Below are positions 382 through 37,771 of a DNA stretch of 64,000 bases, in pieces. Location of the stretch: positions 186,001-250,000 of the IMG/VR virus record IMGVR_UViG_3300046787_000200; one strand, written 5' to 3'. A model generated the notes under the pieces. It was not told where the DNA came from. It saw only the letters and a program-made list of their open reading frames with translations, and did not search any database. The stretch's first letter is position 1. Every line of letters starts with the position of its first letter. The position numbers and the translations under genes were made by a program.

Positions 382-400
382 CATATCTACTGAATAAAGC

Positions 401-406
401 TAAATA
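401..406 (+). promoter_or_regulatory. Putative late promoter core TAAATA (T4 TATAAATA-like)
   Basis: TAAATA 4 nt before ATG 411; same core recurs before many genes. Confidence 0.6.
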
Positions 407-410
407 CTAG

Positions 411-2642: not shown

Positions 2643-2650
2643 GATAAATA
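2643..2650 (+). promoter_or_regulatory. Putative late promoter GATAAATA
   Basis: Motif 21 nt before ATG 2672, inside palindrome 2631-2656. Confidence 0.55.
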
Positions 2651-2671
2651 CTATATCAAACGGGATTCCAT

Positions 2672-4183
2672 ATGAAAATCAGTCAAATTATACAAGAAAC
2701 AACAACGTCAGGGTCAGTAGCACCTGTAGAATTAGGGTTTGTTAAAATGCAAACACGTAATCCAAGTGTATACGGTGACACTAAAGCAGGCAACTTACTA
2801 AAAGGTAAGAAAACAAATAAGCCATTTGCTAATAGCGTAAATGAGTCTAAAATGAAAGATTTAGCTTACGATATGGAAACAATGAAGCCTGCTGAGTTTC
2901 AAAAGAAGTATGGTAAAAGCAGAGAACAAATGAAGGCTTCTCCTATCAATAAGCCTGCTCAACCACAAAAACCAACTCCACTAGTCAACGAAGCTGACTT
3001 ACAAGAAGATGATGTAATATTAGTTCCTGGTCAGGGAAGAAAAACAAAGACTGGTTTTGTACCTCACGGAGAAAGTCGTGTAGACCACGAAGTAGAAATG
3101 GCTGTCAGCGATTTGTTCAGTGCAGGTAAGAATGCTGAGAAAATCTATAACATCGTAAGAAGTATCAGTGAAGAAGAAGGTCTTGAAGGCTGGGTACAAG
3201 AGAAGATTATTAAAGCTAATGACTATCTAAACACAGTCCGTGAATACTTAGAAGGTAAACAAGTTCAAGGTATGGCGGAAGGCTTGAATGATACTGTATA
3301 TCCTAACGCAGAAGTAATCAAAAGTAAAAATGGTAAGCCAGTTGGTGAGATATATCAAGATGGCAATAGTTGGGGTGCTTTTCACTATCGAGCAGACCGT
3401 GGATATGATATGATTGACAGTAGGGAAGATGCGATAGAAGCATTGAAAGATTTACATCAAGAAACAGGTCGCAGTCGTCCAGACTATACTATAAAAGGTG
3501 TGGCGGAAGGCTTACCACAGACTCTACGCAAAGTTGTTCCCGGACACGCCAAGCGTGAAATTGATAAGAAGATGGATGCTGGAAAATTTGGCAAAACTGA
3601 TGCTGATAAAGATGCTAACTTCCAACGCTACAAAAAGATTCAAGACAAGTTAAAAGAGCAAGGTGTGGAAGAAGGCTTTGGATTGAGGGGCACCGGTAAT
3701 CCAGGTATGCCAACTCCATATGACCAAGGACGAGCAGATGCCAAAAAAGGTCGTCCATATGACAATCCATATGACCAGCCAGGCGAAGAACAAGAACATA
3801 GAAACTATCGTAAAGGCTATGAGCAGGGTAAAGAGCAAGGTGTGGCGGAAGGCGCGGAACAAGTTTACAAGGTATTGGCTGTTGACAAGAGCAACGCATT
3901 GTCCAAACAAGTGAAGTTAAAGGTAAAAGCCAGTTCATTAGATGAAGTGTTTGAACGATTGGCAATCAATGATTGGTATCCTTTAGAAATCAACGGTGTA
4001 GAAGTAATCAACGGCAAGCGCCTAAAGCAAGGTGTGGCGGAAGGTGCTAAAGTAGATCGTATGGTTAAGCACATTGAAAAGTCTGAAAAGAAATTAGGCA
4101 AGTCTGAAAAAGAAGCAGAGAACATTGCTTGGGCTACAGCTAACAAACGTGGTATGTTAGATAACAAGAATAAGAAAGCGTAA
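2672..4183 (+). CDS. Modular polyprotein with QGVAEG-delimited cassettes, probable internal head protein
   Basis: Leader MKISQIIQE; five in-frame (Q/K)G(V/M)(A/E)EG linkers between unrelated segments. Confidence 0.75.
   Translation: MKISQIIQETTTSGSVAPVELGFVKMQTRNPSVYGDTKAGNLLKGKKTNKPFANSVNESKMKDLAYDMETMKPAEFQKKYGKSREQMKASPINKPAQPQKPTPLVNEADLQEDDVILVPGQGRKTKTGFVPHGESRVDHEVEMAVSDLFSAGKNAEKIYNIVRSISEEEGLEGWVQEKIIKANDYLNTVREYLEGKQVQGMAEGLNDTVYPNAEVIKSKNGKPVGEIYQDGNSWGAFHYRADRGYDMIDSREDAIEALKDLHQETGRSRPDYTIKGVAEGLPQTLRKVVPGHAKREIDKKMDAGKFGKTDADKDANFQRYKKIQDKLKEQGVEEGFGLRGTGNPGMPTPYDQGRADAKKGRPYDNPYDQPGEEQEHRNYRKGYEQGKEQGVAEGAEQVYKVLAVDKSNALSKQVKLKVKASSLDEVFERLAINDWYPLEINGVEVINGKRLKQGVAEGAKVDRMVKHIEKSEKKLGKSEKEAENIAWATANKRGMLDNKNKKA
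3266..4044 (+). repeat. Array of five 17-bp direct repeats, consensus CAAGGTGTGGCGGAAGG
   Basis: Copies start at 3266, 3494, 3659, 3836, 4028; periods 228, 165, 177, 192 nt, all multiples of 3. Confidence 0.95.
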
Positions 4184-4184
4184 T

Positions 4185-7100
4185 ATGAGCAGTATTCTAA
4201 AAGGTTTAAACGAATCCAATTCAGTATATGGACATAGTGATCCAGATAGAGAATACGGTGCACCTGCAACGTCATACAGTAAACGTGGTCCTTATTCACA
4301 CACAGATGATGACGATGATGGTAATCCATTCGCTGAATATGAACGTCAGCAAAGAATGTTTGCTGTTGGTCGTGCTGAGAAGGCTGCAAGAGAAAAAGCA
4401 CAGCGTGATAGTGACCACGATAGATTAGCAACCGGTACTAATGAAGAACAACTTGACGAACTATCAAATGAGAAGCTAGGTCAATATAAAACAGCCGCCG
4501 CTGCCGATGCAGGTAAAGCTGATTTAGCCGGTGACTATAAGAAAGCCGATAAACGTTTTAGTGGTATCGTAAAAGCGACTAAGAAACAGTTTGCTAATGA
4601 TGCTAAAACTGTCAAAGAAGATATTAATGCAGTATATAAAGAAGCTAAATCATTACTTACTCAATTAGATGAATCTACACAGCAACAAGTTATCAATGCT
4701 CTAAAAAAGAATGTGGATGCTGAAAAAGATAAACAAAAGAGCAAATATCCAAGACTTGATAATCCTAAAATTTTAGGAACAAATAATAAAGCTAAATCAA
4801 TATACTATCCACCAAGCAAACCTAATGTAAAGAAGTTAGATAAGCCATTACCAGAAAGCTTGGGTGATCAGCTTAAATCTAAATCATTAGATGCATTGCA
4901 ACAAGTTAAACAAAATATCGAACAAAAACGTATGGCTGATTTAGAGCAGTGGGAAAAAGATTTCAAACAAAATACTGTTTCTAAGTTTACAGCAAGACAA
5001 CCAAGTTTTATGCAACAACCTAAGCAAGTTGCAAGACCACTAGAGAAGCATTCAGTATTGAAAGCAAGATTAGCACAACTTGATAAAGCTATTGAGAAGC
5101 AAGCTGTATTAGACAAGATGTTGCAACGCCTTGATGCTAAAGGTCTATTAACACCTGCAATACAATCTGATACAGATACAAGTATGTTAGTGCGTGATGG
5201 TGCAAATGATAATTATGTTTCATTAAATCAGAAGTTGGACAAAGCATTAGAGTTCGTTAAGAACAGATTAATGACTAACAAAACCGCTTTTGCTAAACCA
5301 AAAGCGATTGATGAAAATGAAGAACTAGATGAAAATCTACACAAGTGGTTCAAAGAGAAGTGGGTTCGTTTCGGTCCAGATGGTAAGATTCGCGGTGACT
5401 GCGCTAGAGGTGATGATAGTGAAGGTAAACCAAAATGCTTACCACAAAGTAAAGCACATAGTCTAGGCAAGAAGGGTCGTGCTAGTGCGGCAAGTCGTAA
5501 GCGTAGAGAAGATCCTAATCCAGAGCGTAGTGGCAAGGCTATCAATGTCAATACTAAGAAAAATAGTAATGAAAGTGTGGTCCTTGGGCGAGATGAAGGT
5601 AACTTTGTAAGTGATACACCAGTCAATCTAGGTGGTGTAGTAGTTAAGAATTTAGGTATCGGTGATATTGTAAGTTACTTCGGACAAAAAGCAAAAATAA
5701 TTGCTATGTCTAAAACAGGAAATACATCTCGCATTACAATACCAAGTGGTATGGGTGGTGTTACTAAAGATGTTCTTACTAAAGATTTGAAACGCACAAG
5801 TTTATCTGAGGAAGAGTTAGACGAAGCCTGTTGGAAAGGTTATCACAAAGAGGGTAACAAGAAAATGTTTGGCAATCCATATCCTAACTGTGTAAAGAAT
5901 ACTAACGAAGAATTAGATATGACAGAAGGCTGGAAAGAAGAAGCACAAGATTTAGAAGACTGGTCTAAAGAAGTCAACATGAGACTGTACAGAGCGCATG
6001 AGAGTCAGCGCCCTGCACTAGCAAGACAACTAAGCAAATTAGAACAAAAACACTTTGGTAGTGAATTTACACATCCAAACTTAACTAATGTAGTTTGGTC
6101 AGCATTACGAGCATTACAAAAAGGTGAGATGGTTCACTATGATCCACAACGTGTAGGTCAAATGCCATTTGGTAATATAGTAGGTGATGATGCTAAAATC
6201 ATTGCACAGTATAATATAACTCGTGATGAACTTGCCGGTTATCGTATGTTACACGATAAAGGTATGGTAGATAATCTTGAACAATTTTTAAAGTTACGCC
6301 GTTTAGTACGTGCAAAATCATGGCCACTAGAGTATTATGAAGAATTAGAGAAGTTATCAACAGAAGAAGCATGGTTAAAAATGGCCAATGATTTGAATTG
6401 GTCCAAAGATGATATGAACGAATCAGTTCAAGCCAAAACTGATGACAACTTACGAGCATACTACGCACAACGTAAAGCAGAAAAAGAAAAGCAACATAGC
6501 GAAAGTTGCCCACATTGCGGTGGCGAAATGGTTAGTGAAGAACTAATGAATGAAAAGAAAGATGCTTGCTACTATAAAGTAAAGAGCCGTTACAAGGTAT
6601 GGCCAAGTGCTTATGCTAGTGGTGCGTTAGTTAAGTGCCGTAAGAAGGGCGCAAGCAACTGGGGCAACGGTGGTAAGAGTAATGAAAGTGTTGCGGAAGA
6701 CGATGCCGGTGATGTTGAACAGCGTATGATTGCTAAAATAGAAAAAGAAAAACAGCGTCTAGCAAAACTAAAGCAGACAGATCCAGAAGCATACAAGCGT
6801 GAAATAGAAAAGCGTAAAACTTCATCTAGAGTTCCTCCTGTGTCTACATTTGAAGATCAAGGTGTGGCGGAAGGGCCTGGTTTTGATAAATGGGCAGATG
6901 ATAGAGCGGCATCACAACTACACAAACTAAAACCCGGGATGGTTCAAGACCGCAAGACCGGCAAGTGGTATGATCCTAACAAAGAGTTTGACAAGAAGAT
7001 GAACAGTCCTGAAGTCATGGCTCAAATGAAGCGTATGGCACAGAAAGAAAGCATCGAAGAAGACCAACTTGATGAAAAGTGGACTAAGAAATACAAAGAT

Positions 7101-7199
7101 AGCATCAACTGTAGTAATCCAAAAGGCTTTAGTCAAAAAGCACATTGTGCTGGTAAACAGAAAAATGAAAGTGCAATATTGAAAGGGCTTAAATTATGA
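4185..7199 (+). CDS. 1004-aa modular polyprotein, probable internal head protein
   Basis: Short basic or Cys-containing modules separated by LDE/NES/MNE/VAE linkers; one exact 17-bp repeat. Confidence 0.7.
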   Translation: MSSILKGLNESNSVYGHSDPDREYGAPATSYSKRGPYSHTDDDDDGNPFAEYERQQRMFAVGRAEKAAREKAQRDSDHDRLATGTNEEQLDELSNEKLGQYKTAAAADAGKADLAGDYKKADKRFSGIVKATKKQFANDAKTVKEDINAVYKEAKSLLTQLDESTQQQVINALKKNVDAEKDKQKSKYPRLDNPKILGTNNKAKSIYYPPSKPNVKKLDKPLPESLGDQLKSKSLDALQQVKQNIEQKRMADLEQWEKDFKQNTVSKFTARQPSFMQQPKQVARPLEKHSVLKARLAQLDKAIEKQAVLDKMLQRLDAKGLLTPAIQSDTDTSMLVRDGANDNYVSLNQKLDKALEFVKNRLMTNKTAFAKPKAIDENEELDENLHKWFKEKWVRFGPDGKIRGDCARGDDSEGKPKCLPQSKAHSLGKKGRASAASRKRREDPNPERSGKAINVNTKKNSNESVVLGRDEGNFVSDTPVNLGGVVVKNLGIGDIVSYFGQKAKIIAMSKTGNTSRITIPSGMGGVTKDVLTKDLKRTSLSEEELDEACWKGYHKEGNKKMFGNPYPNCVKNTNEELDMTEGWKEEAQDLEDWSKEVNMRLYRAHESQRPALARQLSKLEQKHFGSEFTHPNLTNVVWSALRALQKGEMVHYDPQRVGQMPFGNIVGDDAKIIAQYNITRDELAGYRMLHDKGMVDNLEQFLKLRRLVRAKSWPLEYYEELEKLSTEEAWLKMANDLNWSKDDMNESVQAKTDDNLRAYYAQRKAEKEKQHSESCPHCGGEMVSEELMNEKKDACYYKVKSRYKVWPSAYASGALVKCRKKGASNWGNGGKSNESVAEDDAGDVEQRMIAKIEKEKQRLAKLKQTDPEAYKREIEKRKTSSRVPPVSTFEDQGVAEGPGFDKWADDRAASQLHKLKPGMVQDRKTGKWYDPNKEFDKKMNSPEVMAQMKRMAQKESIEEDQLDEKWTKKYKDSINCSNPKGFSQKAHCAGKQKNESAILKGLKL
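6858..6874 (+). repeat. Sixth copy of the 17-bp repeat, exact consensus
   Basis: CAAGGTGTGGCGGAAGG, in frame as QGVAEG. Confidence 0.95.
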
Positions 7200-7315
7200 G
7201 AGATTACACATTTACAGCAGAATGCAACAGCGGTCAGGTAAAGACCTTTACATTTCAGGCTGCCAACTACAGAGCCGCTAGAACTAAACTAGAAGAATTA
7301 ATAGCGGCAAACTAA
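7196..7315 (+). CDS. 39-aa hypothetical protein (not in ORF track)
   Basis: ATGA overlap with upstream stop; MRDYTFTAECNSGQVKTFTFQAANYRAARTKLEELIAAN. Confidence 0.6.
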   Translation: MRDYTFTAECNSGQVKTFTFQAANYRAARTKLEELIAAN

Positions 7316-7359
7316 AATGAAAGACTATGACTTCTATTGGAATAGGTTAGGTTACCCTA

Positions 7360-7800
7360 ATGGCACTAAGTTGGCGAGATAAACAAAAACAATTTTTAGT
7401 TGATTCAATAGAATTCGACCAAGATGCTAGGATTTTAAATTGGATTGATAATAAACCAACATACTTTTTAGGTGACTCTAATTATTTCAAACAACATGCC
7501 TCCGAAACTAATATCAATAGTGCAACACAAGCAATATTGATATTCAATCATCAAATACTAACCAGTGATTTAGAAAATATATTAAAAGCAACAATACATA
7601 TTCCTAAATTATGTATTGCTATTAATAAGTTTTTAATCATACCGGACAAAACATTTGAATGTAATGACAATTATGATATTGCATTATTTGATTTTGTGCA
7701 GAACATTTTTCCCGACAGGCATATAGATTATTATTATAACAAAAACGTTAAAGATACTAATTTTAATTTTGCAAGCCCCACAACACAATTTTACCTATGA
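7360..7800 (+). CDS. Hypothetical protein (AT-rich)
   Basis: 146-aa ORF. Confidence 0.6.
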   Translation: MALSWRDKQKQFLVDSIEFDQDARILNWIDNKPTYFLGDSNYFKQHASETNINSATQAILIFNHQILTSDLENILKATIHIPKLCIAINKFLIIPDKTFECNDNYDIALFDFVQNIFPDRHIDYYYNKNVKDTNFNFASPTTQFYL

Positions 7801-8375
7801 TATTGAAATCTGATATCAGAACTAATTACCTACTATATAAAAACTCTCAACCATTGTTTAAAAAATGGATTAAAGAGAAACACAAGACAATACTCACTGA
7901 TAAGTATTCAAAGTTTATATTAGGCAATTTACCTCAGGGTAGAAGTGTATGGTTTGATTCATTTGGTTATTGCTTCAAAACATTCAATAAAGACATATAT
8001 TCGGTTGAACTAAGGATGCGTGAATCGTTTTTAAAGAATTTACCGGATATTCTATGTGAGGATGATTTCTATGAAAACATGGATGCACACAGATATTATG
8101 CTAATACATTGAATCCAAAATCAATAGTGTTATATGATTCAGGAATGTTAAAGTATTATAATATTGACGAATATGTGTCGTTCTTTAAAAATATGCAAGA
8201 AATATATAACGTTCCTATTTTTATTAAAATTAATTTAGTATTTTTAGATTTTAACAGACTAAAATACAGATACAGTGACATTGGTAATATCATAGAAAAT
8301 ATGATTCCTAATTCAAAAATAGAGTTTAAAGTCAATAATTTGAATAGGACAGCACTACATTATTGGGAACCCTAA
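7797..8375 (+). CDS. Hypothetical protein (AT-rich)
   Basis: 192-aa ORF, ATGA-coupled. Confidence 0.65.
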   Translation: MILKSDIRTNYLLYKNSQPLFKKWIKEKHKTILTDKYSKFILGNLPQGRSVWFDSFGYCFKTFNKDIYSVELRMRESFLKNLPDILCEDDFYENMDAHRYYANTLNPKSIVLYDSGMLKYYNIDEYVSFFKNMQEIYNVPIFIKINLVFLDFNRLKYRYSDIGNIIENMIPNSKIEFKVNNLNRTALHYWEP

Positions 8376-8428
8376 TCAATTTATAAAAGATAGATTTGTT
8401 GATAAATACTATGATATAGAGGCATATT

Positions 8429-8869
8429 ATGTTATCGGACAATTTAAAAGTATTATTAGCAAGTACACAAAGTTTTGCAATCAAGTCACAGAACTTCCAT
8501 TGGAATGTTGAAGGTAGTAACTTTCCCCAATACCATGAATTTTTTGATACACTATACAGTGACATAAGTGGTACCATTGATCGTATAGCTGAATACATCA
8601 GAATACTAGGTCACTACACACCTGGTAGCTTAAAACGCTACTCAGAACTAAGTGTCATTGAAGACCAAATAAAAATTCCACGTGCTGAATTAATGTTTGC
8701 TGAATCATTACAAGACTGTGAAACAATGCTTCAGTTAGTAACCGCAATGTTTGATGAAGCGGCAGACGAAAAGCAACACGGTATAGAAAACTATATGGCT
8801 GAATTACAAGATTTGTACGGCAAGAAAGCTTGGTTCATTCGTTCAGTATTGAAGAAAGAACGTGAATGA
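8429..8869 (+). CDS. dps: Dps/ferritin-like DNA protection protein
   Basis: NFHWNVEG..F..YHEFF and D.IAE.IR.LG ferroxidase signatures; TAAATA at 8403. Confidence 0.9.
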   Translation: MLSDNLKVLLASTQSFAIKSQNFHWNVEGSNFPQYHEFFDTLYSDISGTIDRIAEYIRILGHYTPGSLKRYSELSVIEDQIKIPRAELMFAESLQDCETMLQLVTAMFDEAADEKQHGIENYMAELQDLYGKKAWFIRSVLKKERE

Positions 8870-9735
8870 GAGCAAATGAATTTTTAATTGAACGTGCAAC
8901 TAGTGTAGTGTTTCATTACACCGGTACTAATGCCGCATTAAAGATTCTAAAATCAGGTAACTTTGAATTAGCAAGCACAACAGGTAATCGTAGCGAAGAA
9001 CAATATGCACCAAAAGGTTATCCATACTTCTTAAGCTTAACACGCACACCAACTGGTGATTATCATAGATATGTTGGTACAGGTGGCGTTATGTTTAAGA
9101 TTGACGGTGATTGGCTAAACAATAGATATGTTGTAAAGCCAATAGACTATTGGGATCGTGCTTGGTTACATAGTGATGGTACACGTTCACGTGAATCAGA
9201 AGATAGATTGTTTAGTAAACAACCCACAGTTCCAGTTACACCTGTAACAGAAGTTCACGTATTGTTAAAAGAACAAGATGAGTTTCGTAGTCCACAAACA
9301 CGACAAATAATGATATCCGCTAAACAAAGAGGTATCCCGGTATATCTTTATACCGATGAGAAAGCTTGGAGACTATTAGATACACGTAAGAGTATTCAAC
9401 CAAGCCAAGCTAAAGATGTATTAAAAGGTCAACAAGGTCCTGGCTACAGTCGTAAGCCAACTGATTTTGTTAAACCCTGGATTGAGTTGATTGAAAAGGA
9501 TCGTGAAGAATATCTAAGCGATAGAGCTAAAAGACAACTAAAGAACTTATTATGGTATCCTGATGCGTCCGGAGATCATAACATAGGTGTAGATTTATCT
9601 AACGCACGTAAGCCAGACGCAGGAGATAGAGCGAGTGCCGTGAAGTTGATTAAATATATGAACGACAATAATATTAAGAATACAGTAGAACTTAAAAACG
9701 CTATTGTCGATAAATGGAATAAGATAAAAAAATGA
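8866..9735 (+). CDS. Putative ADP-ribosyltransferase-fold protein with capsid-targeting-like leader
   Basis: MRANEFLIE; FHYT ... LSLTR ... ESEDR (H-S-ExE arrangement). Confidence 0.5.
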   Translation: MRANEFLIERATSVVFHYTGTNAALKILKSGNFELASTTGNRSEEQYAPKGYPYFLSLTRTPTGDYHRYVGTGGVMFKIDGDWLNNRYVVKPIDYWDRAWLHSDGTRSRESEDRLFSKQPTVPVTPVTEVHVLLKEQDEFRSPQTRQIMISAKQRGIPVYLYTDEKAWRLLDTRKSIQPSQAKDVLKGQQGPGYSRKPTDFVKPWIELIEKDREEYLSDRAKRQLKNLLWYPDASGDHNIGVDLSNARKPDAGDRASAVKLIKYMNDNNIKNTVELKNAIVDKWNKIKK

Positions 9736-10604
9736 GATTAGTTGAGTTTGTTACTGAAGCCGTCGGAGGTGATTACATTTATCATAGTGTAGCACAGCCT
9801 AACCAGATCTGGAACATACTTAGAAAAGGTGTAATACAACCACAAATATCTGAAACAGATGAAGAAGGTGGTTGGGAGATACCAGTTATCAGTGCAAGTA
9901 GAAGTCAATATTATAGATACCCATATGGTGGTGGTAGTATTCAACTTGTTTTAGATAGAAATGCATTACGTCAAGCCGGTTTCAAAGTATTGCCATTCTC
10001 TTATATGCAGTTTTACAATCAAGCTGATGGCAGTGGCCCTACAGCAAGTAATCCAATGTATAAACAAGAAACAGAAGAACGTATCTATCATCCAAAAGGT
10101 ATAGGTATTCCTGTTAAGAAACCATATGTCGTGGGTATACAGATACGTAAAGAGCTAATGGATAAAGTTCCAGAAGGTCTATTGAAGTTGATTAGTGATG
10201 CTGGATTAACATTAACACCAATGAAAGATGATCCTACTAACAGAGAAAAGTTTTCACGTAAGTTAGCTAAACCACCATTGAATCCGGCACACTATTACAA
10301 ACCAAATGAAGTTCAAATAGTAGCAAGGCGAGACAATCCAAATGGATATACATTATGGAGTGTTAAACCTGATGGCTACATCTTGCCGATTGGTGATACC
10401 GGTGAGTTTAATAAGGGCGGTTTGACAAAACAAAAAGCAATAGATGCATTTAAGAGACTTACCGGTGCCAATCCAAAAGAAGTTCAAAACGTTATTAAAT
10501 ATGATGGTACGTTTAACCCAAATTATTACCACGATGAATCCGGCGGTCCAAGCAGAGAACTATACAACTGGGTTCCTCAGATAGTAAATAGTAATACACA
10601 ATGA
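9732..10604 (+). CDS. Second putative ADP-ribosyltransferase-fold protein with capsid-targeting-like leader
   Basis: MRLVEFVTE; IYHS ... ISASRS ... ETEERI. Confidence 0.5.
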   Translation: MRLVEFVTEAVGGDYIYHSVAQPNQIWNILRKGVIQPQISETDEEGGWEIPVISASRSQYYRYPYGGGSIQLVLDRNALRQAGFKVLPFSYMQFYNQADGSGPTASNPMYKQETEERIYHPKGIGIPVKKPYVVGIQIRKELMDKVPEGLLKLISDAGLTLTPMKDDPTNREKFSRKLAKPPLNPAHYYKPNEVQIVARRDNPNGYTLWSVKPDGYILPIGDTGEFNKGGLTKQKAIDAFKRLTGANPKEVQNVIKYDGTFNPNYYHDESGGPSRELYNWVPQIVNSNTQ

Positions 10605-10614
10605 GATATTTAAA

Positions 10615-12993
10615 ATGAGAGCATTAGACTTTATATTAGAAAATACAGAGGTACTTGACGAAGTAGCGATGAATCCTACTCGTTTAAAGCAAGAAGCTGC
10701 CAAGACTGGTGCTCAAGCTGGTATGGAATTCGAAATGATTGTTCCAAACGTTAAATCAGAGGACGTAGATAACGATCCAGAACCAGACTATGATAGTGAT
10801 GAATCTGCACGTGATATAGATGATATAGCTAGGTTCTTTCGTGACGGCGAATATAACAGTCGTAGACAAATAGATGAGTTAGTAGACCAACTACGTGATG
10901 GTTACTATGAGTGGGCTGACGAACAACGTAGCGAACAATGGGATCGTGAAGGAAAAGATTATTTACGTGAATACATTGAAAATGAAGGCGAGTTTGATGA
11001 AGATGCTGCCTTAGATGAAGCTTATGACCAATTAGGTTTTACTGATGAACAAAAAGAAGCGGCAAGTAAAGCCGGTGCAACAATAACAAAACGCTCAGAT
11101 GCAGTAGGTAATGAAGATTGGGAGCATTGGAAAGAAGCACAAGATTTAGTTGGCGAAAAGTTAGACCAGTTTGTTGAAGAACAATGGGATGAGAGAGGTC
11201 GCCTATACGACAATGCATATGAAAAGTGGACTGATGAAGCTGATTGGCCTGATGAAAGTGATTGGTTAGACAGTCAAAACCTTCAGACAATGCAAGACAT
11301 TGAAAGTAACTATGATGTTACTTGGCCACATTGGCAATATCCTGATTCAGGTGGCGAATTGAGTATTGACGATGTTGCTGATGAGTTCAGCAGAATGATC
11401 GGTAAGCCAATCAATTCAAGTGAGCGTTATCACGGTGCTCGTAGAGAAGCAGGCCATTATGTTGTTGAACCTGATGGTAGCTTAGAACCAGATGATAGTG
11501 ATGATGCTGGATTAGAGTTTGTAAGCCCACCAATGCCCATAGATGAAATGTTAAGTGACTTCAATAAAGTTGTTGCTTGGGCAAAAAGTAAAGGTTGCTA
11601 TACTAATGATAGTACTGGATTGCACATAAATGTAAGCGTACCTGATTTTAGTAGAGATAAACTTGACTATGTTAAGTTAGCAATATTATTAGGTGATGAG
11701 TATGTTCTAAAAGAGTTTGGTCGTGAAGGTAATACTTACACTAAGAGCGCATTGAAACGAGTTAAAGATAACATTAGAAGTCGCCCAGAAGATGCCAAAC
11801 GTTTGTTAGACAGTATGAAGGCAGGCTTAAATGATATTGCTAGTAAAGCTGTTCATAGCGGTGCTACAGACAAATATACAAGTATCAACACTAAAGATGG
11901 TTATATTGAGTTTCGTAGTCCCGGTGGTGATTGGTTAGATGCTGATATCCCTAAGATTGAGAATACATTGTTACGATTTGTTGTAGCATTAGATGCCGCA
12001 GTTGATCCACAGAAGTATAGAAAAGAATATCTAACAAAGCTTTATAAGTTGTTGTCACCGAGCAAAGACGCTACTGATACTATTCAATACTTTACTAAGT
12101 ATGCCGCAGGTGAGTTACCAAAGGCTGCATTACGTAGCTTTGTTAAACAAGCACAGTTAGAACGTAAGATTAAATCTGATAAAGAACAAGGTAAGAAGTA
12201 TTGGTGGCGTGTTGATAAAGAAGGTCAAGGACGTTCTGGTGCAAGCTTAGAAGTTGTTGCTACAAGTAAAGAAGAAGCATTAGAAAAAGCAGCCAGTGAA
12301 TGGAATATTCGTTTAGGTGCATTGACACAAGCTGATGCTTATCCTATTCGTAAGTTTGAAGAACCTGCAAGCAATACACCAAGATATGAAATCTTCAACT
12401 TGAATACAAACAATAGTGTAGAAGATGCTGAAGGAATTACCAATGATAGAGACGCATTGATTCGATTAAATGATTATTTACAACATGGTCCACATAGATT
12501 ATCGGCTGATCAGGCTAGAAATACATTTGGAATTAGACGTGTAGGTGATAGTGAACCTATACTAGCACAACCAATTAGTCGAGGTGGTAATGAACCACAG
12601 TCAAGGTTTGAAATCTATCGTATCAGTGACGGTCGATCATTAACAAGACGAGGAGAACCATTACAAATCGTTGCTAATGGTGTTGAGGGTGCTGAACGTC
12701 AGATGATAGAAATAATACGCAGTCTCGATTTTGGCGCACCTGAACTATTTGCAGTTCGTAGTGTAATAGAACCTCCGGCGCAGCCGGGCAGCACAACTGA
12801 CATACAACAACAACGTGCGGCAGGTGGTGCATTCACTGGTGCTTGGAAAGTATTAGCTGATGGACGTGAAGTATATCGTTTCAGTGGCGTAGGCAATCAA
12901 CAAAGTGATGCTAATCGTGTAGCTATTCAATGGCTAAGAAACAACGGGTACGATCAAAGTACCGAAGTTGAAGTTGTACCTATAATGAGCTAA
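10615..12993 (+). CDS. Putative amidoligase (COOH-NH2 ligase family) with acidic insert and C-terminal repeated domains
   Basis: GMEFE, EPDGSL, GLEFVSPP, STGLHINVS, YIEFRSPGG; leader MRALDFILE. Confidence 0.8.
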   Translation: MRALDFILENTEVLDEVAMNPTRLKQEAAKTGAQAGMEFEMIVPNVKSEDVDNDPEPDYDSDESARDIDDIARFFRDGEYNSRRQIDELVDQLRDGYYEWADEQRSEQWDREGKDYLREYIENEGEFDEDAALDEAYDQLGFTDEQKEAASKAGATITKRSDAVGNEDWEHWKEAQDLVGEKLDQFVEEQWDERGRLYDNAYEKWTDEADWPDESDWLDSQNLQTMQDIESNYDVTWPHWQYPDSGGELSIDDVADEFSRMIGKPINSSERYHGARREAGHYVVEPDGSLEPDDSDDAGLEFVSPPMPIDEMLSDFNKVVAWAKSKGCYTNDSTGLHINVSVPDFSRDKLDYVKLAILLGDEYVLKEFGREGNTYTKSALKRVKDNIRSRPEDAKRLLDSMKAGLNDIASKAVHSGATDKYTSINTKDGYIEFRSPGGDWLDADIPKIENTLLRFVVALDAAVDPQKYRKEYLTKLYKLLSPSKDATDTIQYFTKYAAGELPKAALRSFVKQAQLERKIKSDKEQGKKYWWRVDKEGQGRSGASLEVVATSKEEALEKAASEWNIRLGALTQADAYPIRKFEEPASNTPRYEIFNLNTNNSVEDAEGITNDRDALIRLNDYLQHGPHRLSADQARNTFGIRRVGDSEPILAQPISRGGNEPQSRFEIYRISDGRSLTRRGEPLQIVANGVEGAERQMIEIIRSLDFGAPELFAVRSVIEPPAQPGSTTDIQQQRAAGGAFTGAWKVLADGREVYRFSGVGNQQSDANRVAIQWLRNNGYDQSTEVEVVPIMS

Positions 12994-12994
12994 T

Positions 12995-13861
12995 ATGAGA
13001 GCAACAGATTTCATAATCGAACAAGAAAATCCTAAAGTAGATTTGACACCTAACTATCCTAACTATCAAGTATTAGTAGGTGAGTATGTTGGTGTAAAGA
13101 AGAATAGATTACTATTCAAAATACTTTCAGCAGAACTAAAGCCAGGACAAGGTGCAACAGATAAGATTGTTAAATCATTAGCAACTGGATTACCATTTGG
13201 TATTGATATTGAACGTGTTAGAAATCGTAAAGTATTAGAAGATTTAACTCGTAGGGGCTTCTTAGGTGGATTAGGCGCAGCCGCATTAGGTGCCACAGGA
13301 GTAGCACAAGCTAAACCAACACAGCCTGCACAACAAAAATCTGAGCCAGTTAATATGTTGAGTAATCATCCTCAACACGAAGCACTATTGCAACGTGCGG
13401 CTAAAGCTGCCGGCATTAAAGGCACGGAGTTAGCACAGTTCATGGCACAAACCAACCATGAATCATGGGACTTTAGTAGATTAAAAGAAAAAGGTATGGG
13501 TAAAGGTTACTTTGCTAAAAAGTATGACCCTAAGTTTGCCCCACAGACAGCTAAGATATTAGGCAATAAACAAGTAGGTGACGGGGAGAAGTATCGCGGT
13601 AGAGGATTCATTCAATTGACAGGACGTGATAATTATCGTATGGCACAACAAGCATTAAAGATACCGTTGTTACAACAGCCCGAGTTAGCAGAGCGTCCAG
13701 ATGTTGCGGCAAAGATTGCTGTATGGTATTGGAATACACGAGTTAAGCCCCATATACAAAACTTTAACGACACTAAAGCAGTAACGCAAAAGATTAATCC
13801 AGCAATGCGTGGCTTACAAGATAGACACGCAAAGTTTATTGATTACAAGAATATTTTATAA
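12995..13861 (+). CDS. GH19 lysozyme/chitinase-family hydrolase with leader and internal twin-arginine segment
   Basis: FMAQTNHES and YRGRGFIQLTGRDNY; MRATDFIIE; TRRGFLGG at residue ~85. Confidence 0.85.
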   Translation: MRATDFIIEQENPKVDLTPNYPNYQVLVGEYVGVKKNRLLFKILSAELKPGQGATDKIVKSLATGLPFGIDIERVRNRKVLEDLTRRGFLGGLGAAALGATGVAQAKPTQPAQQKSEPVNMLSNHPQHEALLQRAAKAAGIKGTELAQFMAQTNHESWDFSRLKEKGMGKGYFAKKYDPKFAPQTAKILGNKQVGDGEKYRGRGFIQLTGRDNYRMAQQALKIPLLQQPELAERPDVAAKIAVWYWNTRVKPHIQNFNDTKAVTQKINPAMRGLQDRHAKFIDYKNIL

Positions 13862-13871
13862 AGAGAGTTAG

Positions 13872-14309
13872 ATGAGAAAAATAATAACAATAGCATTACT
13901 AGCAATATCAACAGTTGCGTTCGCACAAAAACAAAAGCCAATGAATATCTATGATTTCCCAATCACCAGAGTTATTGACGGCGATACAGTAGCGTTTCAA
14001 GCACCGTTCTTACCACCACCATTAAAGCAAGAGTTAAGTATACGTGTATTTGGTGTTGATACACCTGAAAAGGGTCATAGAGCAATGTGTCCACAAGAAG
14101 ACCAACGTGGTCAGGCAGCTACTGCATTTACAAAAAATGCAATTACCAAGGCACAAAAACGTCAAGTAGCTATTGCTGATTGGGATAAATATGGCGGTCG
14201 TGTTTTGGGTGACGTATTATTAGATGGACAAAGTTTAAGAATGATGTTAATACAGAACGGATTTGCAAGAGAATATTACGGAGAAGCTAAGACTTCTTGG
14301 TGTAATTAA
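13872..14309 (+). CDS. Thermonuclease (SNase-like) with signal peptide
   Basis: RVIDGDT, IRVFGVDTPE, DKYGGRVLG; hydrophobic N-terminus ending AFA. Confidence 0.9.
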   Translation: MRKIITIALLAISTVAFAQKQKPMNIYDFPITRVIDGDTVAFQAPFLPPPLKQELSIRVFGVDTPEKGHRAMCPQEDQRGQAATAFTKNAITKAQKRQVAIADWDKYGGRVLGDVLLDGQSLRMMLIQNGFAREYYGEAKTSWCN

Positions 14310-14354
14310 TAATATAACGATTTTTAGATAAATACTTACTATAAGGAGACTATT

Positions 14355-14642
14355 ATGTCAGAAACAGTTCAAAAAACGATTGATCCTATTCAGCCAGACG
14401 CTGAAGGAAGATTGCATACATTTAAGTATGAAGCGGATACTTTTATTCCGTTACTTGATTGGATACAAGCTAACAAAACAGCAGAAGAATATGCTAGTTG
14501 GATGGCAAATGATCAAGTCGGTACACATACTGATGCAGGCGCAGAGTATTATATTGAGTGGCTTCTTGCTCAAAAGATGGTACATATTATAAATCGCCCA
14601 GACGGTATCGTTGTAACAAACGATTATAAAGACTATCTATAA
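14355..14642 (+). CDS. Hypothetical protein
   Basis: AAGGAG RBS; TAAATA at 14329. Confidence 0.75.
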   Translation: MSETVQKTIDPIQPDAEGRLHTFKYEADTFIPLLDWIQANKTAEEYASWMANDQVGTHTDAGAEYYIEWLLAQKMVHIINRPDGIVVTNDYKDYL

Positions 14643-14647
14643 TCTAA

Positions 14648-15220
14648 ATGCGATTTAATCAGATACTATCAGAATCCGCTGCCACTGAACTAGCTAAAAA
14701 ATTGCCTAGTTTAGAAAAGCATAATTACAATACCATTGACAAATTAATGCGTGGTATTGCGAAGAAGCACAGCATTACCGGCAAAGCTTTACATGATTTA
14801 TTCATACGAAAATATCATAGAAGCCCTGATAGTTGGATTAAAAATAAACTAGATGAAACTGGGGATAGTGAGTTACAGCAAGAAGTTGATAAATTTGCTG
14901 AATGGGCAAGTAGTAAATTACACTTGCAACAAGTCCCCAAAATTGAACTAAGTATGGATACAGAAGAGGCTCAGAATAATCATCACACCGGCGGACATAA
15001 AATGGGTGATGATAAGATTTGGGTCTATGTCAACAACCGCAACTTAGTAGATATATTACGAACAGTATTCCATGAATTAGTTCATGTACGCCAAGGTGAA
15101 CTAAATATGATTGAACCAGGCGATAGCTATCCCGGTAGTCCAATCGAAGCAATGGCGGATATGCTAGCTGGTAAATATATCAAAATATATGGTGAGCAAA
15201 ATCATCATATATTTCAATAA
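14648..15220 (+). CDS. Zincin-like (HExxH) metallopeptidase-domain protein with capsid-targeting-like leader
   Basis: MRFNQILSE; RTVFHELVH ... E. Confidence 0.65.
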   Translation: MRFNQILSESAATELAKKLPSLEKHNYNTIDKLMRGIAKKHSITGKALHDLFIRKYHRSPDSWIKNKLDETGDSELQQEVDKFAEWASSKLHLQQVPKIELSMDTEEAQNNHHTGGHKMGDDKIWVYVNNRNLVDILRTVFHELVHVRQGELNMIEPGDSYPGSPIEAMADMLAGKYIKIYGEQNHHIFQ

Positions 15221-23224: not shown

Positions 23225-23431
23225 ATGGCAAAACAACAATATCAATCTAACCCTCGTGTTAATCAAATTTTCGAGGACCTTGAGAACTACTTGGCATTCT
23301 GCCAAGACTTTGGTTACAAGTTTGACGAATCAACCTTGTACGATATGCGTAGTTTCGCATATCGCCAGTTCACTAAAGCAGTGGTAGGCAAGTGGGCTAA
23401 AGATCAATGGGCTGAGGATACTCGTCCATGA
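23225..23431 (+). CDS. Hypothetical protein
   Basis: AAGGA RBS; 68 aa. Confidence 0.7.
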   Translation: MAKQQYQSNPRVNQIFEDLENYLAFCQDFGYKFDESTLYDMRSFAYRQFTKAVVGKWAKDQWAEDTRP

Positions 23432-25387: not shown

Positions 25388-25397
25388 GGAGAAAATT

Positions 25398-25592: not shown

Positions 25593-25594
25593 TC

Positions 25595-25825: not shown

Positions 25826-25857
25826 TAAATAATTGTGCTACACAACGGTAGCACAAT
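25826..25857 (+). promoter_or_regulatory. Late promoter core plus perfect 10-bp leader hairpin before folE
   Basis: TAAATA then ATTGTGCTAC-ACAACG-GTAGCACAAT. Confidence 0.55.
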
Positions 25858-25891
25858 GTCAAAACAAAACCATCACAAAGGAAGGTTATCT

Positions 25892-27624: not shown

Positions 27625-27625
27625 T

Positions 27626-37342: not shown

Positions 37343-37771
37343 TTATAATTGATTACGTTTCTTAGCTAAGAACTGTTCAGCAATCATCACCAACTCTTGC
37401 ATTTGCTCAATACTCTCACAGTTCCATCTACGCAAACTCTTGTTAATGTTACTATTTGGATCTCTCGCTGTCTTGGCGCTAGTTCTGCTTTTCTTCATGC
37501 CCTTCATTCTAGCACAGAATGATTTACGGCGTTTAGCGGCTTTACTGCCCTTTTTAAGTTTGCTAGGTTTAGTAGTAACAGCAGTTTGAATCTTGCTACC
37601 AGGATGACTACGACGGTAGCTGGCTACACTCTTTTTACTCATGCCACCAACTCGTTTGTTATTATGCTTTGACCAATTTTCGCCTTCTTCTACATGCTCA
37701 CACTCACATGGATTTTTTCCACAATGTGGACACATGTTGCTTGATTCAGTTAAAATTTCACTTATTCTCAT
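37343..37771 (-). CDS. Basic protein with capsid-targeting-like leader and CPHCG knuckle
   Basis: MRISEILTE; RRKSFCARM...INKSLRRWNC; minus-strand TAAATA at 37828-37833. Confidence 0.75.
   Translation of the reverse strand: MRISEILTESSNMCPHCGKNPCECEHVEEGENWSKHNNKRVGGMSKKSVASYRRSHPGSKIQTAVTTKPSKLKKGSKAAKRRKSFCARMKGMKKSRTSAKTARDPNSNINKSLRRWNCESIEQMQELVMIAEQFLAKKRNQL

What the first reader, a model, noticed from the sequence alone, without database searches (positions are those of the whole stretch)
2672..15220. Family of proteins sharing a T4-like capsid-targeting leader and carrying enzymatic cargo
Seen: N-termini MKISQIIQE (2672), MRANEFLIE (8866), MRLVEFVTE (9732), MRALDFILE (10615), MRATDFIIE (12995), MRFNQILSE (14648) and MRISEILTE (37771, minus strand) sit on otherwise unrelated proteins. 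Known: the T4 internal-protein capsid targeting sequence is MKTYQEFIAE, removed after Glu. Inference: the phage loads an unusually large enzyme kit (ART-like x2, amidoligase, GH19, zincin) into the head for delivery before gene expression.
Basis: partly seen in the sequence, partly recalled or inferred. Interest (0 to 1): 0.72.

Follow-up and report, generated by a model that had tools for sequence, protein, structure and literature searches.

The report
Capsid-targeting leader on phage enzyme cargo
An uncultivated 352-kb T4-related jumbo phage puts the same 9-residue, T4-like "pack me into the head" tag on nine otherwise different proteins, several of them enzymes, so it probably injects an enzyme kit with its DNA; this still needs virion proteomics.

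Summary
All seven N-termini sit at the stated coordinates. Genome-wide, 10 of 485 ORFs match M-[KR]-x3-h-h-x-E (0.2 expected, P about 2e-14). A matrix trained only on relatives separates nine of them cleanly.

The phage is a T4-superfamily jumbo myovirus with a Gp23 capsid protein and an S77 prohead protease. The leader MRAxEF[ILV]xE aligns with the E-F-I-x-E core of the T4 capsid targeting sequence MKTYQEFIAE. M1 and E9 are invariant in the sampled alignments of three cargo families. AlphaFold2 leaves residues 1-8 unstructured.

Every leader gene lies behind a T4-type late promoter, GATAAATAC, as the head genes do. A conserved small head-core protein carries a leader-like N-terminus, and its PA5oct homologue is virion-associated.

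The cargo calls hold: two ART-fold proteins, which are distant paralogs; an amidoligase; a GH19; and an HTH plus minimal zincin.

Two things are new:
- Repeated GVAEG linkers in multi-module cargo.
- Canonical Tat signals directly behind h-x-E sites, suggesting that protease cleavage unmasks an export signal.

No cultured relative carries these genes, so packaging and cleavage remain inferred. Best reading: a new variant of the T4 CTS system. Confidence is about 0.7.

The parts
400..407 (+). T4-type late-promoter-like motif (CTAAATAC), 11 nt upstream of ORF 411
   Evidence: [AC]TAAATA[CA] is among the most enriched upstream 8-mer groups. Site listed.
411..2621 (+). 736-aa late protein with a weak Pol-beta nucleotidyltransferase match. 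It has no canonical leader (starts MDLKELDSF). In relatives it is fused to the amidoligase protein.
   Evidence: Pfam NTP_transf_2 at E 0.007, below the cut-off, and phrog_36119. Fused 1354-1548-aa homologues in L014-L016 and L028.
2644..2651 (+). Late-promoter-like motif (within TGATAAATACT), 28 nt upstream of the leader gene at 2672
2672..4183 (+). Leader protein 1 (503 aa). Leader MKISQIIQE at 2672-2698. A conserved N-domain of about 190 aa is followed by five short modules, each ending in G[VM][AE]EG (aa 200, 276, 331, 390, 454). Candidate multiply-cleaved polyprotein.
   Evidence: No Pfam or PHROG family.
4185..7199 (+). 1004-aa protein that starts one base after the stop of 2672-4183. 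N-terminus MSSILKGLNE; one GVAEG at aa 893. The C-terminal part matches phrog_727, which also covers DUF6321. Candidate further cargo.
8402..8409 (+). Late-promoter-like motif (within TGATAAATACT) heading the run of genes 8429-13861
8429..8869 (+). Ferritin/Dps-like protein, first gene of the leader run. Its end overlaps the start of 8866 by 4 bases.
   Evidence: Pfam Ferritin E 7e-19. Found near the leader genes in L018, L026 and L028.
8866..9735 (+). Leader protein 2 (289 aa). Leader MRANEFLIE at 8866-8892; ADP-ribosyltransferase-fold domain at aa about 10-170; helical C-domain.
   Evidence: AF2 pLDDT 82, residues 1-8 below 50. Tpt1 Z 11.8, DarT Z 8.7-9.1, Foldseek E 2e-4. 427 homologues; among 24 aligned, M1, E9, H17, Y18 and E110/E112 are invariant.
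9732..10604 (+). Leader protein 3 (290 aa). Leader MRLVEFVTE at 9732-9758. Divergent paralog of the ART-fold protein.
   Evidence: hhalign against the 8866 family: 95%, E 2e-8. Some homologues add an h-x-E site, a Tat-like signal and an M48-like zincin at the C-terminus.
10615..12993 (+). Leader protein 4 (792 aa). Leader MRALDFILE at 10615-10641; Amidoligase_2 domain at aa 249-444.
   Evidence: Pfam PF12224, E 7e-10, 39.5 bits against a cut-off of 22. 27 related viral loci.
12995..13861 (+). Leader protein 5 (288 aa). Leader MRATDFIIE at 12995-13021; a mobile module of about 75 aa (aa 10-82); the site VLE|D; a Tat-like signal; then GH19.
   Evidence: Pfam GH19 E 1e-12. The module is found inside more than 20 unrelated multi-module proteins.
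13244..13312 (+). Internal twin-arginine (Tat) signal-like segment, aa 84-106: T-RR-GFL, a Gly/Ala-rich hydrophobic stretch, then AQA
   Evidence: TIGR01409: 19.7 bits against a cut-off of 16.7. 18 related segments all have Glu 3-5 residues before the RR.
13872..14309 (+). Staphylococcal-nuclease-like protein with a hydrophobic, signal-peptide-like N-terminus. No leader; lies between leader genes.
   Evidence: Pfam SNase E 4e-12. N-terminus.
14328..14335 (+). Late-promoter-like motif (within AGATAAATACT) heading genes 14355-15220
14355..14642 (+). 95-aa protein of unknown function. No leader and no family match; it lies directly after the late-promoter-like motif at 14328 and directly before the leader gene at 14648.
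   Evidence: ORF and N-terminus. No Pfam family. Promoter motif 27 nt upstream.
14648..15220 (+). Leader protein 6 (190 aa). Leader MRFNQILSE at 14648-14674; HTH-like helical domain (aa 10-70); invariant L68-x-E70; minimal zincin (aa 72-190) with HELVH and E167.
   Evidence: 1717 homologues; among 19 aligned, M1, E9, L68, E70, H142, E143, H146 and E167 are invariant. AF2 pLDDT 79. Top fold hits are zincins (Wss1 Z 7.7, ERAP1, SPRTN, BepA, minigluzincins) plus AraC/Ada-type HTH for aa 3-72.
37343..37771 (-). Leader protein 7 (142 aa). Leader MRISEILTE at 37745-37771; Cys-rich zinc-ribbon-like segment; DUF6321.
   Evidence: Pfam DUF6321 E 2e-11. Several PHROGs in which this domain is the C-terminus of large phage proteins.
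37827..37834 (-). Late-promoter-like motif (within TGATAAATAA), 63 nt upstream of the leader gene at 37771

Best explanation
The shared N-terminus is a divergent, 9-residue version of the T4 capsid targeting sequence (CTS).

Proposed course of events:
1. The tagged proteins are made late, together with the head proteins.
2. The leader, M-R-A-x-E-F-[ILV]-x-E, docks them onto the scaffolding core of the prohead.
3. The T4-type S77 prohead protease cuts after Glu9. It probably also cuts at further h-x-E sites, such as the GVAE|G linkers, L68-x-E70 in the zincin protein and VLE|D in the GH19 protein.
4. The mature proteins stay in the head with the DNA and are ejected into the next host.

The cargo is an enzyme kit: two ART-fold proteins (analogous to T4 Alt), an amidoligase, a GH19 muramidase or chitinase-type hydrolase, an HTH plus minimal zincin, a DUF6321 zinc-ribbon protein, a polyprotein of small modules, and two small proteins outside the window.

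Shown here: the motif and its enrichment, its conservation across families, the presence of the T4-type machinery, the promoter context and the domain assignments.

Inferred: docking, cleavage, presence in virions and ejection.
For: 1. Enrichment and clean separation of the leader.

2. T4 machinery. Gp23 capsid protein (E 1e-99) and Peptidase_S77 (E 9e-28) in the same genome, with scaffold-like genes beside them. The capsid protein, scaffold and protease each begin with a short peptide ending in h-x-E. The capsid propeptide ends LAE|S just before the conserved mature N-terminus.

3. Likeness to T4. ipII and ipIII start MKTYQEFIAE. The literature places targeting at residues 4 and 7 and processing at residues 8 and 10 (PMC9026906). 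F, I and E align with F6, [ILV]7 and E9 here.

4. Conservation. M1 and E9 are invariant in the sampled alignments of the ART-like (24 sequences of 427 homologues), ART-paralog (19 sequences) and zincin (19 of 1717) families. Insertions fall immediately after the leader and bring a second h-x-E.

5. Leader residues 1-8 have pLDDT below 50 in both AF2 models, so they are not part of the folds.

6. Codons vary synonymously between leaders (TTT/TTC, GAA/GAG, ATA/ATT/GTA/TTA), which points to selection on the peptide.

7. Late promoters. [AC]TAAATA[CA] lies within 70 nt upstream of 56 of 485 genes. Those include the portal and core genes and the first gene of all six same-strand gene runs that hold leader genes (P about 2e-6).

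8. The small core protein between the portal and scaffold genes has a leader-like N-terminus across the clade: G000 MKLFEMFDQ, Vibrio 2.275.O MKLVELFEA, GAP32 MLDEIFEA and PA5oct gp150 MKINDIITE. The PA5oct record marks gp150 as a structural protein found by ESI-MS/MS.

9. Clade-wide use on many different cargoes. Seven consecutive tagged genes in L025. The strict DNA pattern gives 6, 2, 7 and 6 hits in four of five related viral genomes, with 0 control hits.

10. T4 precedent for enzyme cargo: Alt, an ART packaged through a short propeptide (PMC9026906 and PMC5694885).
Against: - There is no direct evidence that any of these proteins is in a virion or loses its N-terminus.
- The cultured relatives checked (PA5oct, Vibrio 2.275.O, GAP32) have no hit to the strict leader pattern. 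PA5oct and Vibrio 2.275.O also have no homologue of any of the ten proteins and no leader family. No published proteome can therefore be borrowed.
- The leader is one residue shorter than the T4 CTS and lacks Tyr4, one of the two residues reported as important for targeting.
- The protease-plus-leader complex prediction gave no answer.
- A generic h-x-E near the N-terminus is common (54 ORFs against 38 in a positional control), so that motif alone proves little.
- The position matrix was trained on sequences selected by regular expression, so it is partly circular.
Confidence: 0.72

Rival explanations
1. The leader is a shared N-terminal cassette kept for another reason. It could be a recombination or translation-initiation module that lets genes be swapped into late operons. 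It could be a degron or regulatory tag. Or it could target a non-capsid assembly, for example the ferritin/Dps-like protein encoded at the head of the operon.
For: - The first 10 nucleotides (ATGAGAGCAA) are strikingly similar between genes and between genomes.
- Many tagged genes overlap their neighbours by 4 bases and may be translationally coupled.
- Cargo modules are clearly shuffled between relatives.
- A Dps-like gene lies near the leader genes in this phage and in three relatives.
Against: - Synonymous variation at positions 5-9 with a preserved peptide pattern.
- Invariant Glu9 and hydrophobic 6-7, matching a protease site.
- Likeness to the experimentally defined T4 CTS core.
- A T4-type protease and scaffold are present.
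- Recombination at conserved CTS ends is compatible with CTS function and does not replace it.
Confidence: 0.15
2. The leader is the N-region of an export signal. On this view the tagged proteins are exported to the envelope of the producing cell, for lysis or superinfection exclusion, rather than packaged.
For: - The GH19 protein and several relatives carry canonical Tat-like signals.
- In P0293 the leader is fused directly to one (MRAIEFISE-DIS-RRGFL...), which would be a normal Tat N-region.
Against: - Most tagged proteins have no hydrophobic region at all: both ART-fold proteins, the amidoligase, the zincin, DUF6321 and the polyprotein.
- In the window's GH19 the Tat-like segment starts at residue 84, behind a folded module. 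That is atypical for a working signal unless it is cleaved free.
- ART and amidoligase enzymes use cytoplasmic co-substrates (NAD, ATP).
Confidence: 0.06
3. The similarity reflects chance or simple paralogy from recent gene duplication, and has no function.
For: 8866 and 9732 are paralogs. 102342 and 102740 share a C-terminal motif.
Against: - P about 2e-14 for the motif count.
- The cargoes have different folds and families: ART, Amidoligase_2, GH19, zincin, DUF6321.
- The leader is kept in the sampled divergent homologues (down to 53% identity in the ART-like family) of cargo families that number hundreds of members.
Confidence: 0.02

Closest known systems
Phage T4 internal proteins IPI, IPII, IPIII and Alt, with their capsid targeting sequence (Mullaney and Black 1996; reviewed in PMC9026906 and PMC3012670)
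   Same: - A short N-terminal propeptide shared by unrelated cargo proteins.
- An E-F-I-x-E core that ends in the gp21 L/I-x-E cleavage motif.
- The phage has a homologous S77 protease, a scaffold and a Gp23 capsid protein.
- Late expression.
- The cargo includes an ADP-ribosyltransferase-fold enzyme, as Alt is.
   Different: - Nine residues instead of ten; Arg2 and Ala3 instead of Lys-Thr-Tyr, so no Tyr4.
- Nine or ten tagged genes instead of about four, most of them with enzyme folds or domains rather than small basic proteins.
- Extra internal h-x-E or GVAEG junctions in multi-module precursors.
- Some cargo carries a Tat signal behind the cleavage site.
- No experimental evidence for any of it.
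Ejection (E) proteins of phiKZ-like giant phages such as SPN3US (PMC5694885, PMC7411985)
   Same: Many proteins are packaged in a jumbo-phage head. They are processed by a gp21-related protease after Glu, and their propeptides are thought to target them to the prohead.
   Different: Those propeptides are mostly 80-130 residues long and not a shared short tag. That phage lineage is different (chimalliviruses with a virion RNA polymerase). The motif there is written as ALE or SLE rather than a conserved leader.
Polyvalent proteins of phages and conjugative elements (Iyer et al. 2017, PMC5512222)
   Same: The domain repertoire overlaps: ART, zincin-like metallopeptidase, lysozyme-type hydrolase, Pol-beta NTase. 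Both are proposed to be delivered with the DNA, with proteolytic release of modules.
   Different: - There the domains are strung on one giant polypeptide, thought to be processed by its own zincins.
- Here most domains are separate genes, each with its own CTS-like tag.
- The multi-module relatives here are joined by h-x-E or GVAEG sites that fit the prohead protease.
- That paper's text contains no occurrence of 'amidoligase'.
Bacterial twin-arginine (Tat) signal peptides (TIGR01409, PF10518)
   Same: The S/T-R-R-x-F-L-K/G consensus, a Gly/Ala-rich hydrophobic region and an A-x-A end. Scores are at or above the curated cut-offs.
   Different: The signals are internal, at residue 84 in the window's protein and up to residue 325 in relatives. 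They always follow a Glu 3-5 residues upstream, and they sit in phage late proteins that mostly start with the CTS-like leader.

Membership tests
T4-type CTS-tagged internal head proteins | A short conserved N-terminal propeptide shared by otherwise unrelated proteins of one phage | tested here: met
   10 of 485 ORFs against 0.2 expected. Nine separate cleanly by position matrix. Cargoes are unrelated except one paralog pair.
T4-type CTS-tagged internal head proteins | The propeptide ends in the prohead-protease motif (L/I-x-E, cut after Glu) | tested here: met
   [ILVF]-x-E at positions 7-9 in all ten. E9 is invariant in the three family alignments. The capsid protein's own propeptide ends LAE|S.
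T4-type CTS-tagged internal head proteins | Sequence likeness to the T4 CTS at the residues shown to matter (4 and 7 for targeting, 8 and 10 for processing) | tested here: inconclusive
   F7, I8 and E10 of T4 align with F6, [ILV]7 and E9 here. Tyr4 has no counterpart, and the leader is one residue shorter.
T4-type CTS-tagged internal head proteins | The phage encodes the T4-type prohead protease, scaffold core and Gp23 shell | tested here: met
   PF03420 at E 9e-28 and PF07068 at E 1e-99, with adjacent coiled-coil and acidic scaffold-like genes.
T4-type CTS-tagged internal head proteins | Late expression together with the head genes | tested here: met
   By sequence only. A TATAAATA-like motif stands in front of all six leader gene runs and in front of the portal and core genes. 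No transcript data.
T4-type CTS-tagged internal head proteins | The protein is present in purified virions with the propeptide removed | not testable with these tools
   The phage is uncultivated. PA5oct and Vibrio 2.275.O lack homologues. Only the leader-like small core protein has a virion-detected homologue, PA5oct gp150.
T4-type CTS-tagged internal head proteins | The leader is sufficient to package a foreign protein | not testable with these tools
   Needs a packaging assay.
ADP-ribosyltransferase superfamily (8866 and 9732 proteins) | The ART fold | tested here: met
   AF2 pLDDT 82. Tpt1 Z 11.8, DarT Z 8.7-9.1, Foldseek probability 1.0. 9732 is linked by hhalign at E 2e-8.
ADP-ribosyltransferase superfamily (8866 and 9732 proteins) | Catalytic motif (H-Y-E or R-S-E) and NAD-dependent activity | tested here: inconclusive
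   Invariant H17-Y18, S57/R60 and E110-x-E112 are compatible with an H-Y-E-type site. They were not mapped residue by residue onto a solved active site, and no activity data exist.
Amidoligase_2 (PF12224) | Profile match above the curated cut-off | tested here: met
   39.5 bits against a cut-off of 22, aa 249-444.
Glycoside hydrolase family 19 | Profile match above the curated cut-off | tested here: met
   48.8 bits against a cut-off of 25.5, aa 142-253. phrog_181 endolysin at E 4e-39.
Zincin metallopeptidases (14648 protein) | HExxH plus a downstream Glu ligand on the zincin fold | tested here: met
   H142, E143, H146 and E167 are invariant in the 19-sequence alignment. Most of the top fold matches are zincins, but Z is only 7.7 and lower. 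No Pfam or PDB sequence hit.
Tat signal peptides | Twin-arginine consensus with a hydrophobic region, scoring above the model cut-off | tested here: met
   TIGR01409: 19.7 against 16.7 for aa 84-104 of the 12995 protein. PF10518: 21.5-22.7 against 22.7 in relatives.
Tat signal peptides | Located at the N-terminus of the exported protein | tested here: not met
   It is internal in the precursor, at residue 84. It would become N-terminal only after the proposed cleavage at VLE|D.
Polyvalent proteins (Iyer et al. 2017) | Several effector domains in one polypeptide | tested here: not met
   In this window the effector domains are separate genes. Only 2672-4183 and some relatives (P0273, P0276, P0281, P0285) are multi-module.

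The most novel reading that the evidence does not exclude
Cleavage by the prohead protease unmasks a host export signal.

In the GH19 protein of this phage the order is: leader, an adaptor module, h-x-E, three residues, then a canonical twin-arginine signal, then the enzyme. At least 17 related segments follow the same plan, placed in front of GH19 or M48-like zincin domains.

The uncut precursor in the producing cell would keep the Tat signal buried. Only copies processed inside the capsid would carry it at their N-terminus. After ejection into the next host, that host's own Tat system would move them to the periplasm.

This would be a two-step address code (capsid first, then periplasm) for injected phage effectors. 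It would also make the leader a sequence tag for finding injected proteins in uncultivated phages.
Probability: 0.3. Interest if true: 0.85.

Novelty: new variant of a known kind. Interest (0 to 1): 0.7.

Why it matters
Which phage proteins travel with the DNA is hard to learn without virion proteomics, and that is impossible for uncultivated phages. If this 9-residue leader is a working CTS, injected effectors could be read directly from metagenomic sequence for an abundant clade of jumbo phages. The zincin family alone has 1717 homologues in the protein collection searched.

The tagged set would then be a list of candidate early host-takeover or counter-defence enzymes: ART-fold proteins, an amidoligase, a DNA-binding zincin and a muramidase.

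The leader could also serve as a packaging tag for this capsid type, as the T4 CTS does for T4.

The Tat-behind-cleavage-site arrangement, if functional, would be a new way for an injected protein to reach the periplasm of the newly infected cell.

Tried and rejected
- Megablast of the region and tblastn of the 9732 protein against 50,697 phage records found nothing. tblastn of the 14648 protein found only partial matches in cyanophages.
- The strict leader DNA pattern has no hit in Vibrio phage 2.275.O, PA5oct or GAP32.
- The full genomes of PA5oct and 2.275.O were fetched. They hold no homologue of any of the ten tagged proteins, and only 1-2 leader-like N-termini in PA5oct. No published virion proteome can therefore be transferred.
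- The PA5oct, CBB and phAPEC6 papers do not discuss a CTS or cleavage sites.
- Complex prediction with the S77 protease and residues 1-30 of the 8866 protein gave no answer (score 0.00, controls not run). It is neither support nor evidence against.
- A profile of the 14648 family against PDB sequences gave nothing.
- NCBIfam added only the Tat hit.
- A generic test for h-x-E ending at positions 6-10 is not specific (54 ORFs against 38 in a control window). It is not used as evidence.
- My first guess that 16208 is QueC was wrong. Pfam calls it a PP-loop (ATP_bind_3) protein.

Full report
**What the window is.** The window is bases 186001-250000 of a 352,012-bp IMG/VR virus record with 36.6% G+C, rated complete by CheckV. 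The genome encodes a Gp23-family major capsid protein (PF07068, E 1e-99) and a T4-type prohead protease (Peptidase_S77, E 9e-28). These sit next to a portal gene, an acidic scaffold-like gene and a coiled-coil scaffold-like gene. By capsid protein, the nearest isolates are Sinorhizobium phage Phosso (73%), Vibrio phage 2.275.O (70%), Pseudomonas phage PA5oct (69%) and the GAP32/CBB/Serratia BF group (67%). It is therefore an uncultivated T4-superfamily jumbo myovirus.

**The observation.** All seven N-termini are at the stated coordinates. Genome-wide, 10 of 485 gene-like ORFs begin M-[KR]-x3-[FILVM]2-x-E. Amino-acid composition predicts 0.2 (P about 2e-14), and the pattern occurs only three times inside proteins. 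Three members lie outside the window, at genome 102342, 102740 and 109311. A position matrix built only from leaders of related metagenomic phages scores nine G000 proteins at 15-23 bits; the next ORF scores 1.8 and the median is -24.5. On that measure 109311 is borderline. The matrix is partly circular, because its training leaders were selected with the same regular expression. A degenerate DNA pattern for MRxx[DE]F-h-x-E hits six times in G000 and never in the reversed control.

With the nine residues removed, BLASTP finds no relation between cargoes apart from a short C-terminal motif shared by the two small proteins at 102342 and 102740.

**Comparison with T4.** In the T4 record, ipII and ipIII both start MKTYQEFIAE. 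Three points from the literature matter here:
- The first ten residues of IPIII suffice for packaging.
- Residues 4 and 7 matter most for targeting, and residues 8 and 10 for processing.
- gp21 removes such propeptides after Glu in an L/I-x-E context, including a 7-residue propeptide from Alt, the packaged ADP-ribosyltransferase (PMC9026906 and PMC5694885).

The consensus here is MRANEFITE. It aligns with T4 as E-F-I-x-E, so the T4 positions 7, 8 and 10 are kept. It is one residue shorter and lacks Tyr4. The G000 capsid protein, scaffold and protease each start with a short peptide ending in h-x-E. The capsid propeptide ends LAE|S in front of the conserved mature N-terminus, as in the relatives.

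**Conservation of the leader.** The 8866 protein has 427 homologues, the 9732 protein 30, and the 14648 protein 1717. All are metagenomic and none has a Pfam family. In the sampled alignments (24, 19 and 19 sequences), M1 and E9 are invariant. Positions 5-7 keep the pattern [EDQ]-[FI]-[ILV]. Insertions fall directly behind the leader and add a second h-x-E, for example leader-EIVTE-G.... AlphaFold2 models of the 8866 and 14648 proteins (pLDDT 82 and 79) leave residues 1-8 below pLDDT 50, so the leader is not part of either fold. Leader codons vary synonymously between genes and between genomes, which argues for selection on the peptide.

**Expression context.** The most enriched upstream 8-mers include GATAAATA, TATAAATA and ATAAATAC. 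These resemble the T4 late promoter TATAAATA (established knowledge), alongside sigma-70-like TTGACA and TATAAT words. The motif [AC]TAAATA[CA] lies within 70 nt upstream of 56 of 485 genes. Those include the portal gene, the small core protein, the acidic scaffold gene and the lysozyme-bearing head-proximal gene. They also include the first gene of all six same-strand gene runs that contain leader genes, which lie at window 2644, 8402, 14328 and 37834(-) and at genome 101497 and 107686. That gives P about 2e-6 if the six are independent.

**A link to the head core.** A protein of about 74 aa is encoded between the portal and scaffold genes throughout the clade. It has a leader-like N-terminus in G000 (MKLFEMFDQ), Vibrio 2.275.O (MKLVELFEA), GAP32 (MLDEIFEA) and PA5oct gp150 (MKINDIITE). 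The PA5oct record marks gp150 as a structural protein detected by ESI-MS/MS. This is the only experimental anchor, and it is indirect.

**Distribution.** Related viral contigs carry the same leader on many different cargoes. L025 has seven consecutive tagged genes. The strict DNA pattern gives 6, 2, 7 and 6 hits in four of five related viral genomes, with zero control hits. The strict pattern has no hit in Vibrio 2.275.O, PA5oct or GAP32. PA5oct and Vibrio 2.275.O have no homologue of any of the ten proteins. The expansion is therefore specific to an uncultivated subclade.

**Cargo.**
- **8866:** ART fold. VIA-align gives Tpt1 Z 11.8 and DarT Z 8.7-9.1; Foldseek gives DarT and Tpt1 at E 2e-4 to 8e-4. 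H17, Y18, S57, R60, E110 and E112 are invariant.
- **9732:** paralog of 8866.
- **10615:** Amidoligase_2, above the cut-off.
- **12995:** GH19, above the cut-off.
- **14648:** an AraC/Ada-like helical domain followed by a minimal zincin. H142, E143, H146 and E167 are invariant. The best fold matches are Wss1, ERAP1, SPRTN, BepA and minigluzincins, with Z no higher than 7.7.
- **37343-37771(-):** a zinc-ribbon-like segment plus DUF6321.
- **2672:** a conserved N-domain of about 190 aa followed by five short modules.

**Candidate internal cleavage sites.** G[VM][AE]EG occurs five times in the 2672 protein. It occurs once in the adjacent 4185 protein and once in the 714-aa protein just upstream of the window (genome 183249-185393). 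All six exact copies of GVAEG in the genome lie in these three proteins; by my own rough estimate, not a tool result, about 0.1 would be expected by chance. The same linker recurs in multi-module proteins of relatives, most of which begin with a leader-like N-terminus. In the 2672 family the N-domain is conserved while the modules behind the first linker differ between relatives. In the zincin family, L68-x-E70 is invariant at the junction between the two domains. All of this fits multiple cuts by an h-x-E protease, but it is inference.

**Tat signals.** Residues 84-104 of the 12995 protein match the twin-arginine signal model above its curated cut-off (TIGR01409, 19.7 against 16.7). The local order is VLE, then DLT, then RR-GFL, a Gly/Ala-rich stretch, and AQA. 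Eighteen distinct such segments were found in this protein and its relatives.
- All 18 have Glu 3-5 residues before the RR (12 of them at -4), mostly with a hydrophobic residue two positions earlier.
- 14 of the 18 sit in proteins that start with the leader.
- The minimal case, P0293, is leader-DIS-RRGFL....
- Pfam's TAT_signal model scores them 21.5-22.7 against a cut-off of 22.7.
- Behind them come GH19 domains or an M48-like zincin.
- The module of about 75 aa between the leader and the Tat signal recurs inside more than 20 otherwise different proteins.

G000 also has a plain 207-aa GH19-like ORF with neither leader nor Tat signal (genome 167454-168077; 16.7 bits, below the Pfam cut-off). 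A T4-lysozyme domain sits in a 916-aa protein next to the portal gene. The tagged GH19 therefore need not be the lysis endolysin. The reading I consider most novel, and not excluded, is that prohead-protease cleavage unmasks the Tat signal, so that the ejected enzyme is re-exported to the periplasm of the next host.

**Verdict.** The best-supported explanation is a divergent T4-type capsid targeting sequence that has been spread over an enlarged, largely enzymatic cargo set (confidence about 0.7). It works like the T4 CTS. Membership in that system is met for the sequence-level features and for the machinery, inconclusive for residue-level likeness, and untestable for the two defining experiments: presence in virions with the leader removed, and sufficiency for packaging. 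The closest other concepts are the long-propeptide ejection proteins of phiKZ-like phages and the polyvalent proteins of Iyer et al.. I found no paper describing a CTS-like leader in the Rak2/GAP32/PA5oct-related jumbo phages. That search covered only the held library. I rate it a new variant of a known kind, with interest 0.7.

Noticed in passing
window 13244-13312 (aa 84-106 of the 12995-13861 protein); relatives P0123, P0271-P0273, P0276, P0281, P0293, P0295-P0297, L013, L015, L018: Canonical twin-arginine signal-like segments lie inside phage late proteins. Each is preceded by Glu 3-5 residues before the RR. Most are in leader-tagged proteins and stand in front of GH19 or M48-like zincin domains.
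   Followed up: partly
window 2672-4183, 4185-7199; genome 183249-185393 (just upstream of the window): All six exact copies of the pentapeptide GVAEG in the genome lie in three adjacent late proteins. With variants such as GMAEG and GVEEG it delimits modules of 50-75 aa. The same linker recurs in multi-module proteins of related phages.
   Followed up: partly
window 13022-13240 (aa 10-82 of the 12995 protein): A module of about 75 aa (containing ...DLTPNYPNY... and ending V-x-E) recurs at internal positions in more than 20 otherwise different metagenomic proteins of up to 1106 aa. Its function is unknown; it may be a packaging adaptor.
   Followed up: partly
window 8429-8869: A ferritin/Dps-like protein is the first gene of the late run that holds four leader genes. 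A homologue lies near the leader genes in relatives L018, L026 and L028.
   Followed up: no
window 13872-14309: A staphylococcal-nuclease-like protein with a hydrophobic, signal-peptide-like N-terminus sits between leader genes. It has no leader.
   Followed up: no
genome 7216-7440 (-), outside the window; L031:2913-3134, L030:2854-3096, L032:2729-2959: The small protein between the portal and scaffold genes has a leader-like N-terminus across the whole clade. Its PA5oct homologue, gp150, is virion-associated by mass spectrometry. It may be where the leader originated.
   Followed up: partly
genome 167454-168077 and 9275-12025 (-), outside the window: The genome holds a second, plain GH19-like ORF (207 aa, below the Pfam cut-off, no leader and no Tat signal) that is probably the endolysin. 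A T4-lysozyme domain sits inside a 916-aa protein next to the portal gene.
   Followed up: partly
window 411-2621 and relatives L014-L016, L028: The 736-aa late protein, with a weak Pol-beta nucleotidyltransferase match, is fused to the amidoligase protein in relatives, giving proteins of 1354-1548 aa. In those relatives the amidoligase therefore lacks its own leader.
   Followed up: no
window 23428-35466: A block of metabolic genes that may serve sugar, nucleotide or DNA modification: cytidylyltransferase plus cupin, PTPS (QueD-like), FAD oxidoreductase, SAM synthetase and an NAD-dependent epimerase. The ORF at 30747, with a radical-SAM-like N-terminus, has no Pfam hit.
   Followed up: no
genome 134131-139714, outside the window: Several ORFs begin with a related N-terminus that lacks Glu9 (VKLNEFKES, MKLTDFDKN, MRLYEFTNS). 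They may form a second leader class. L018 uses a similar variant (M-[KR]-[LI]-x-E-L...) on many consecutive genes.
   Followed up: no
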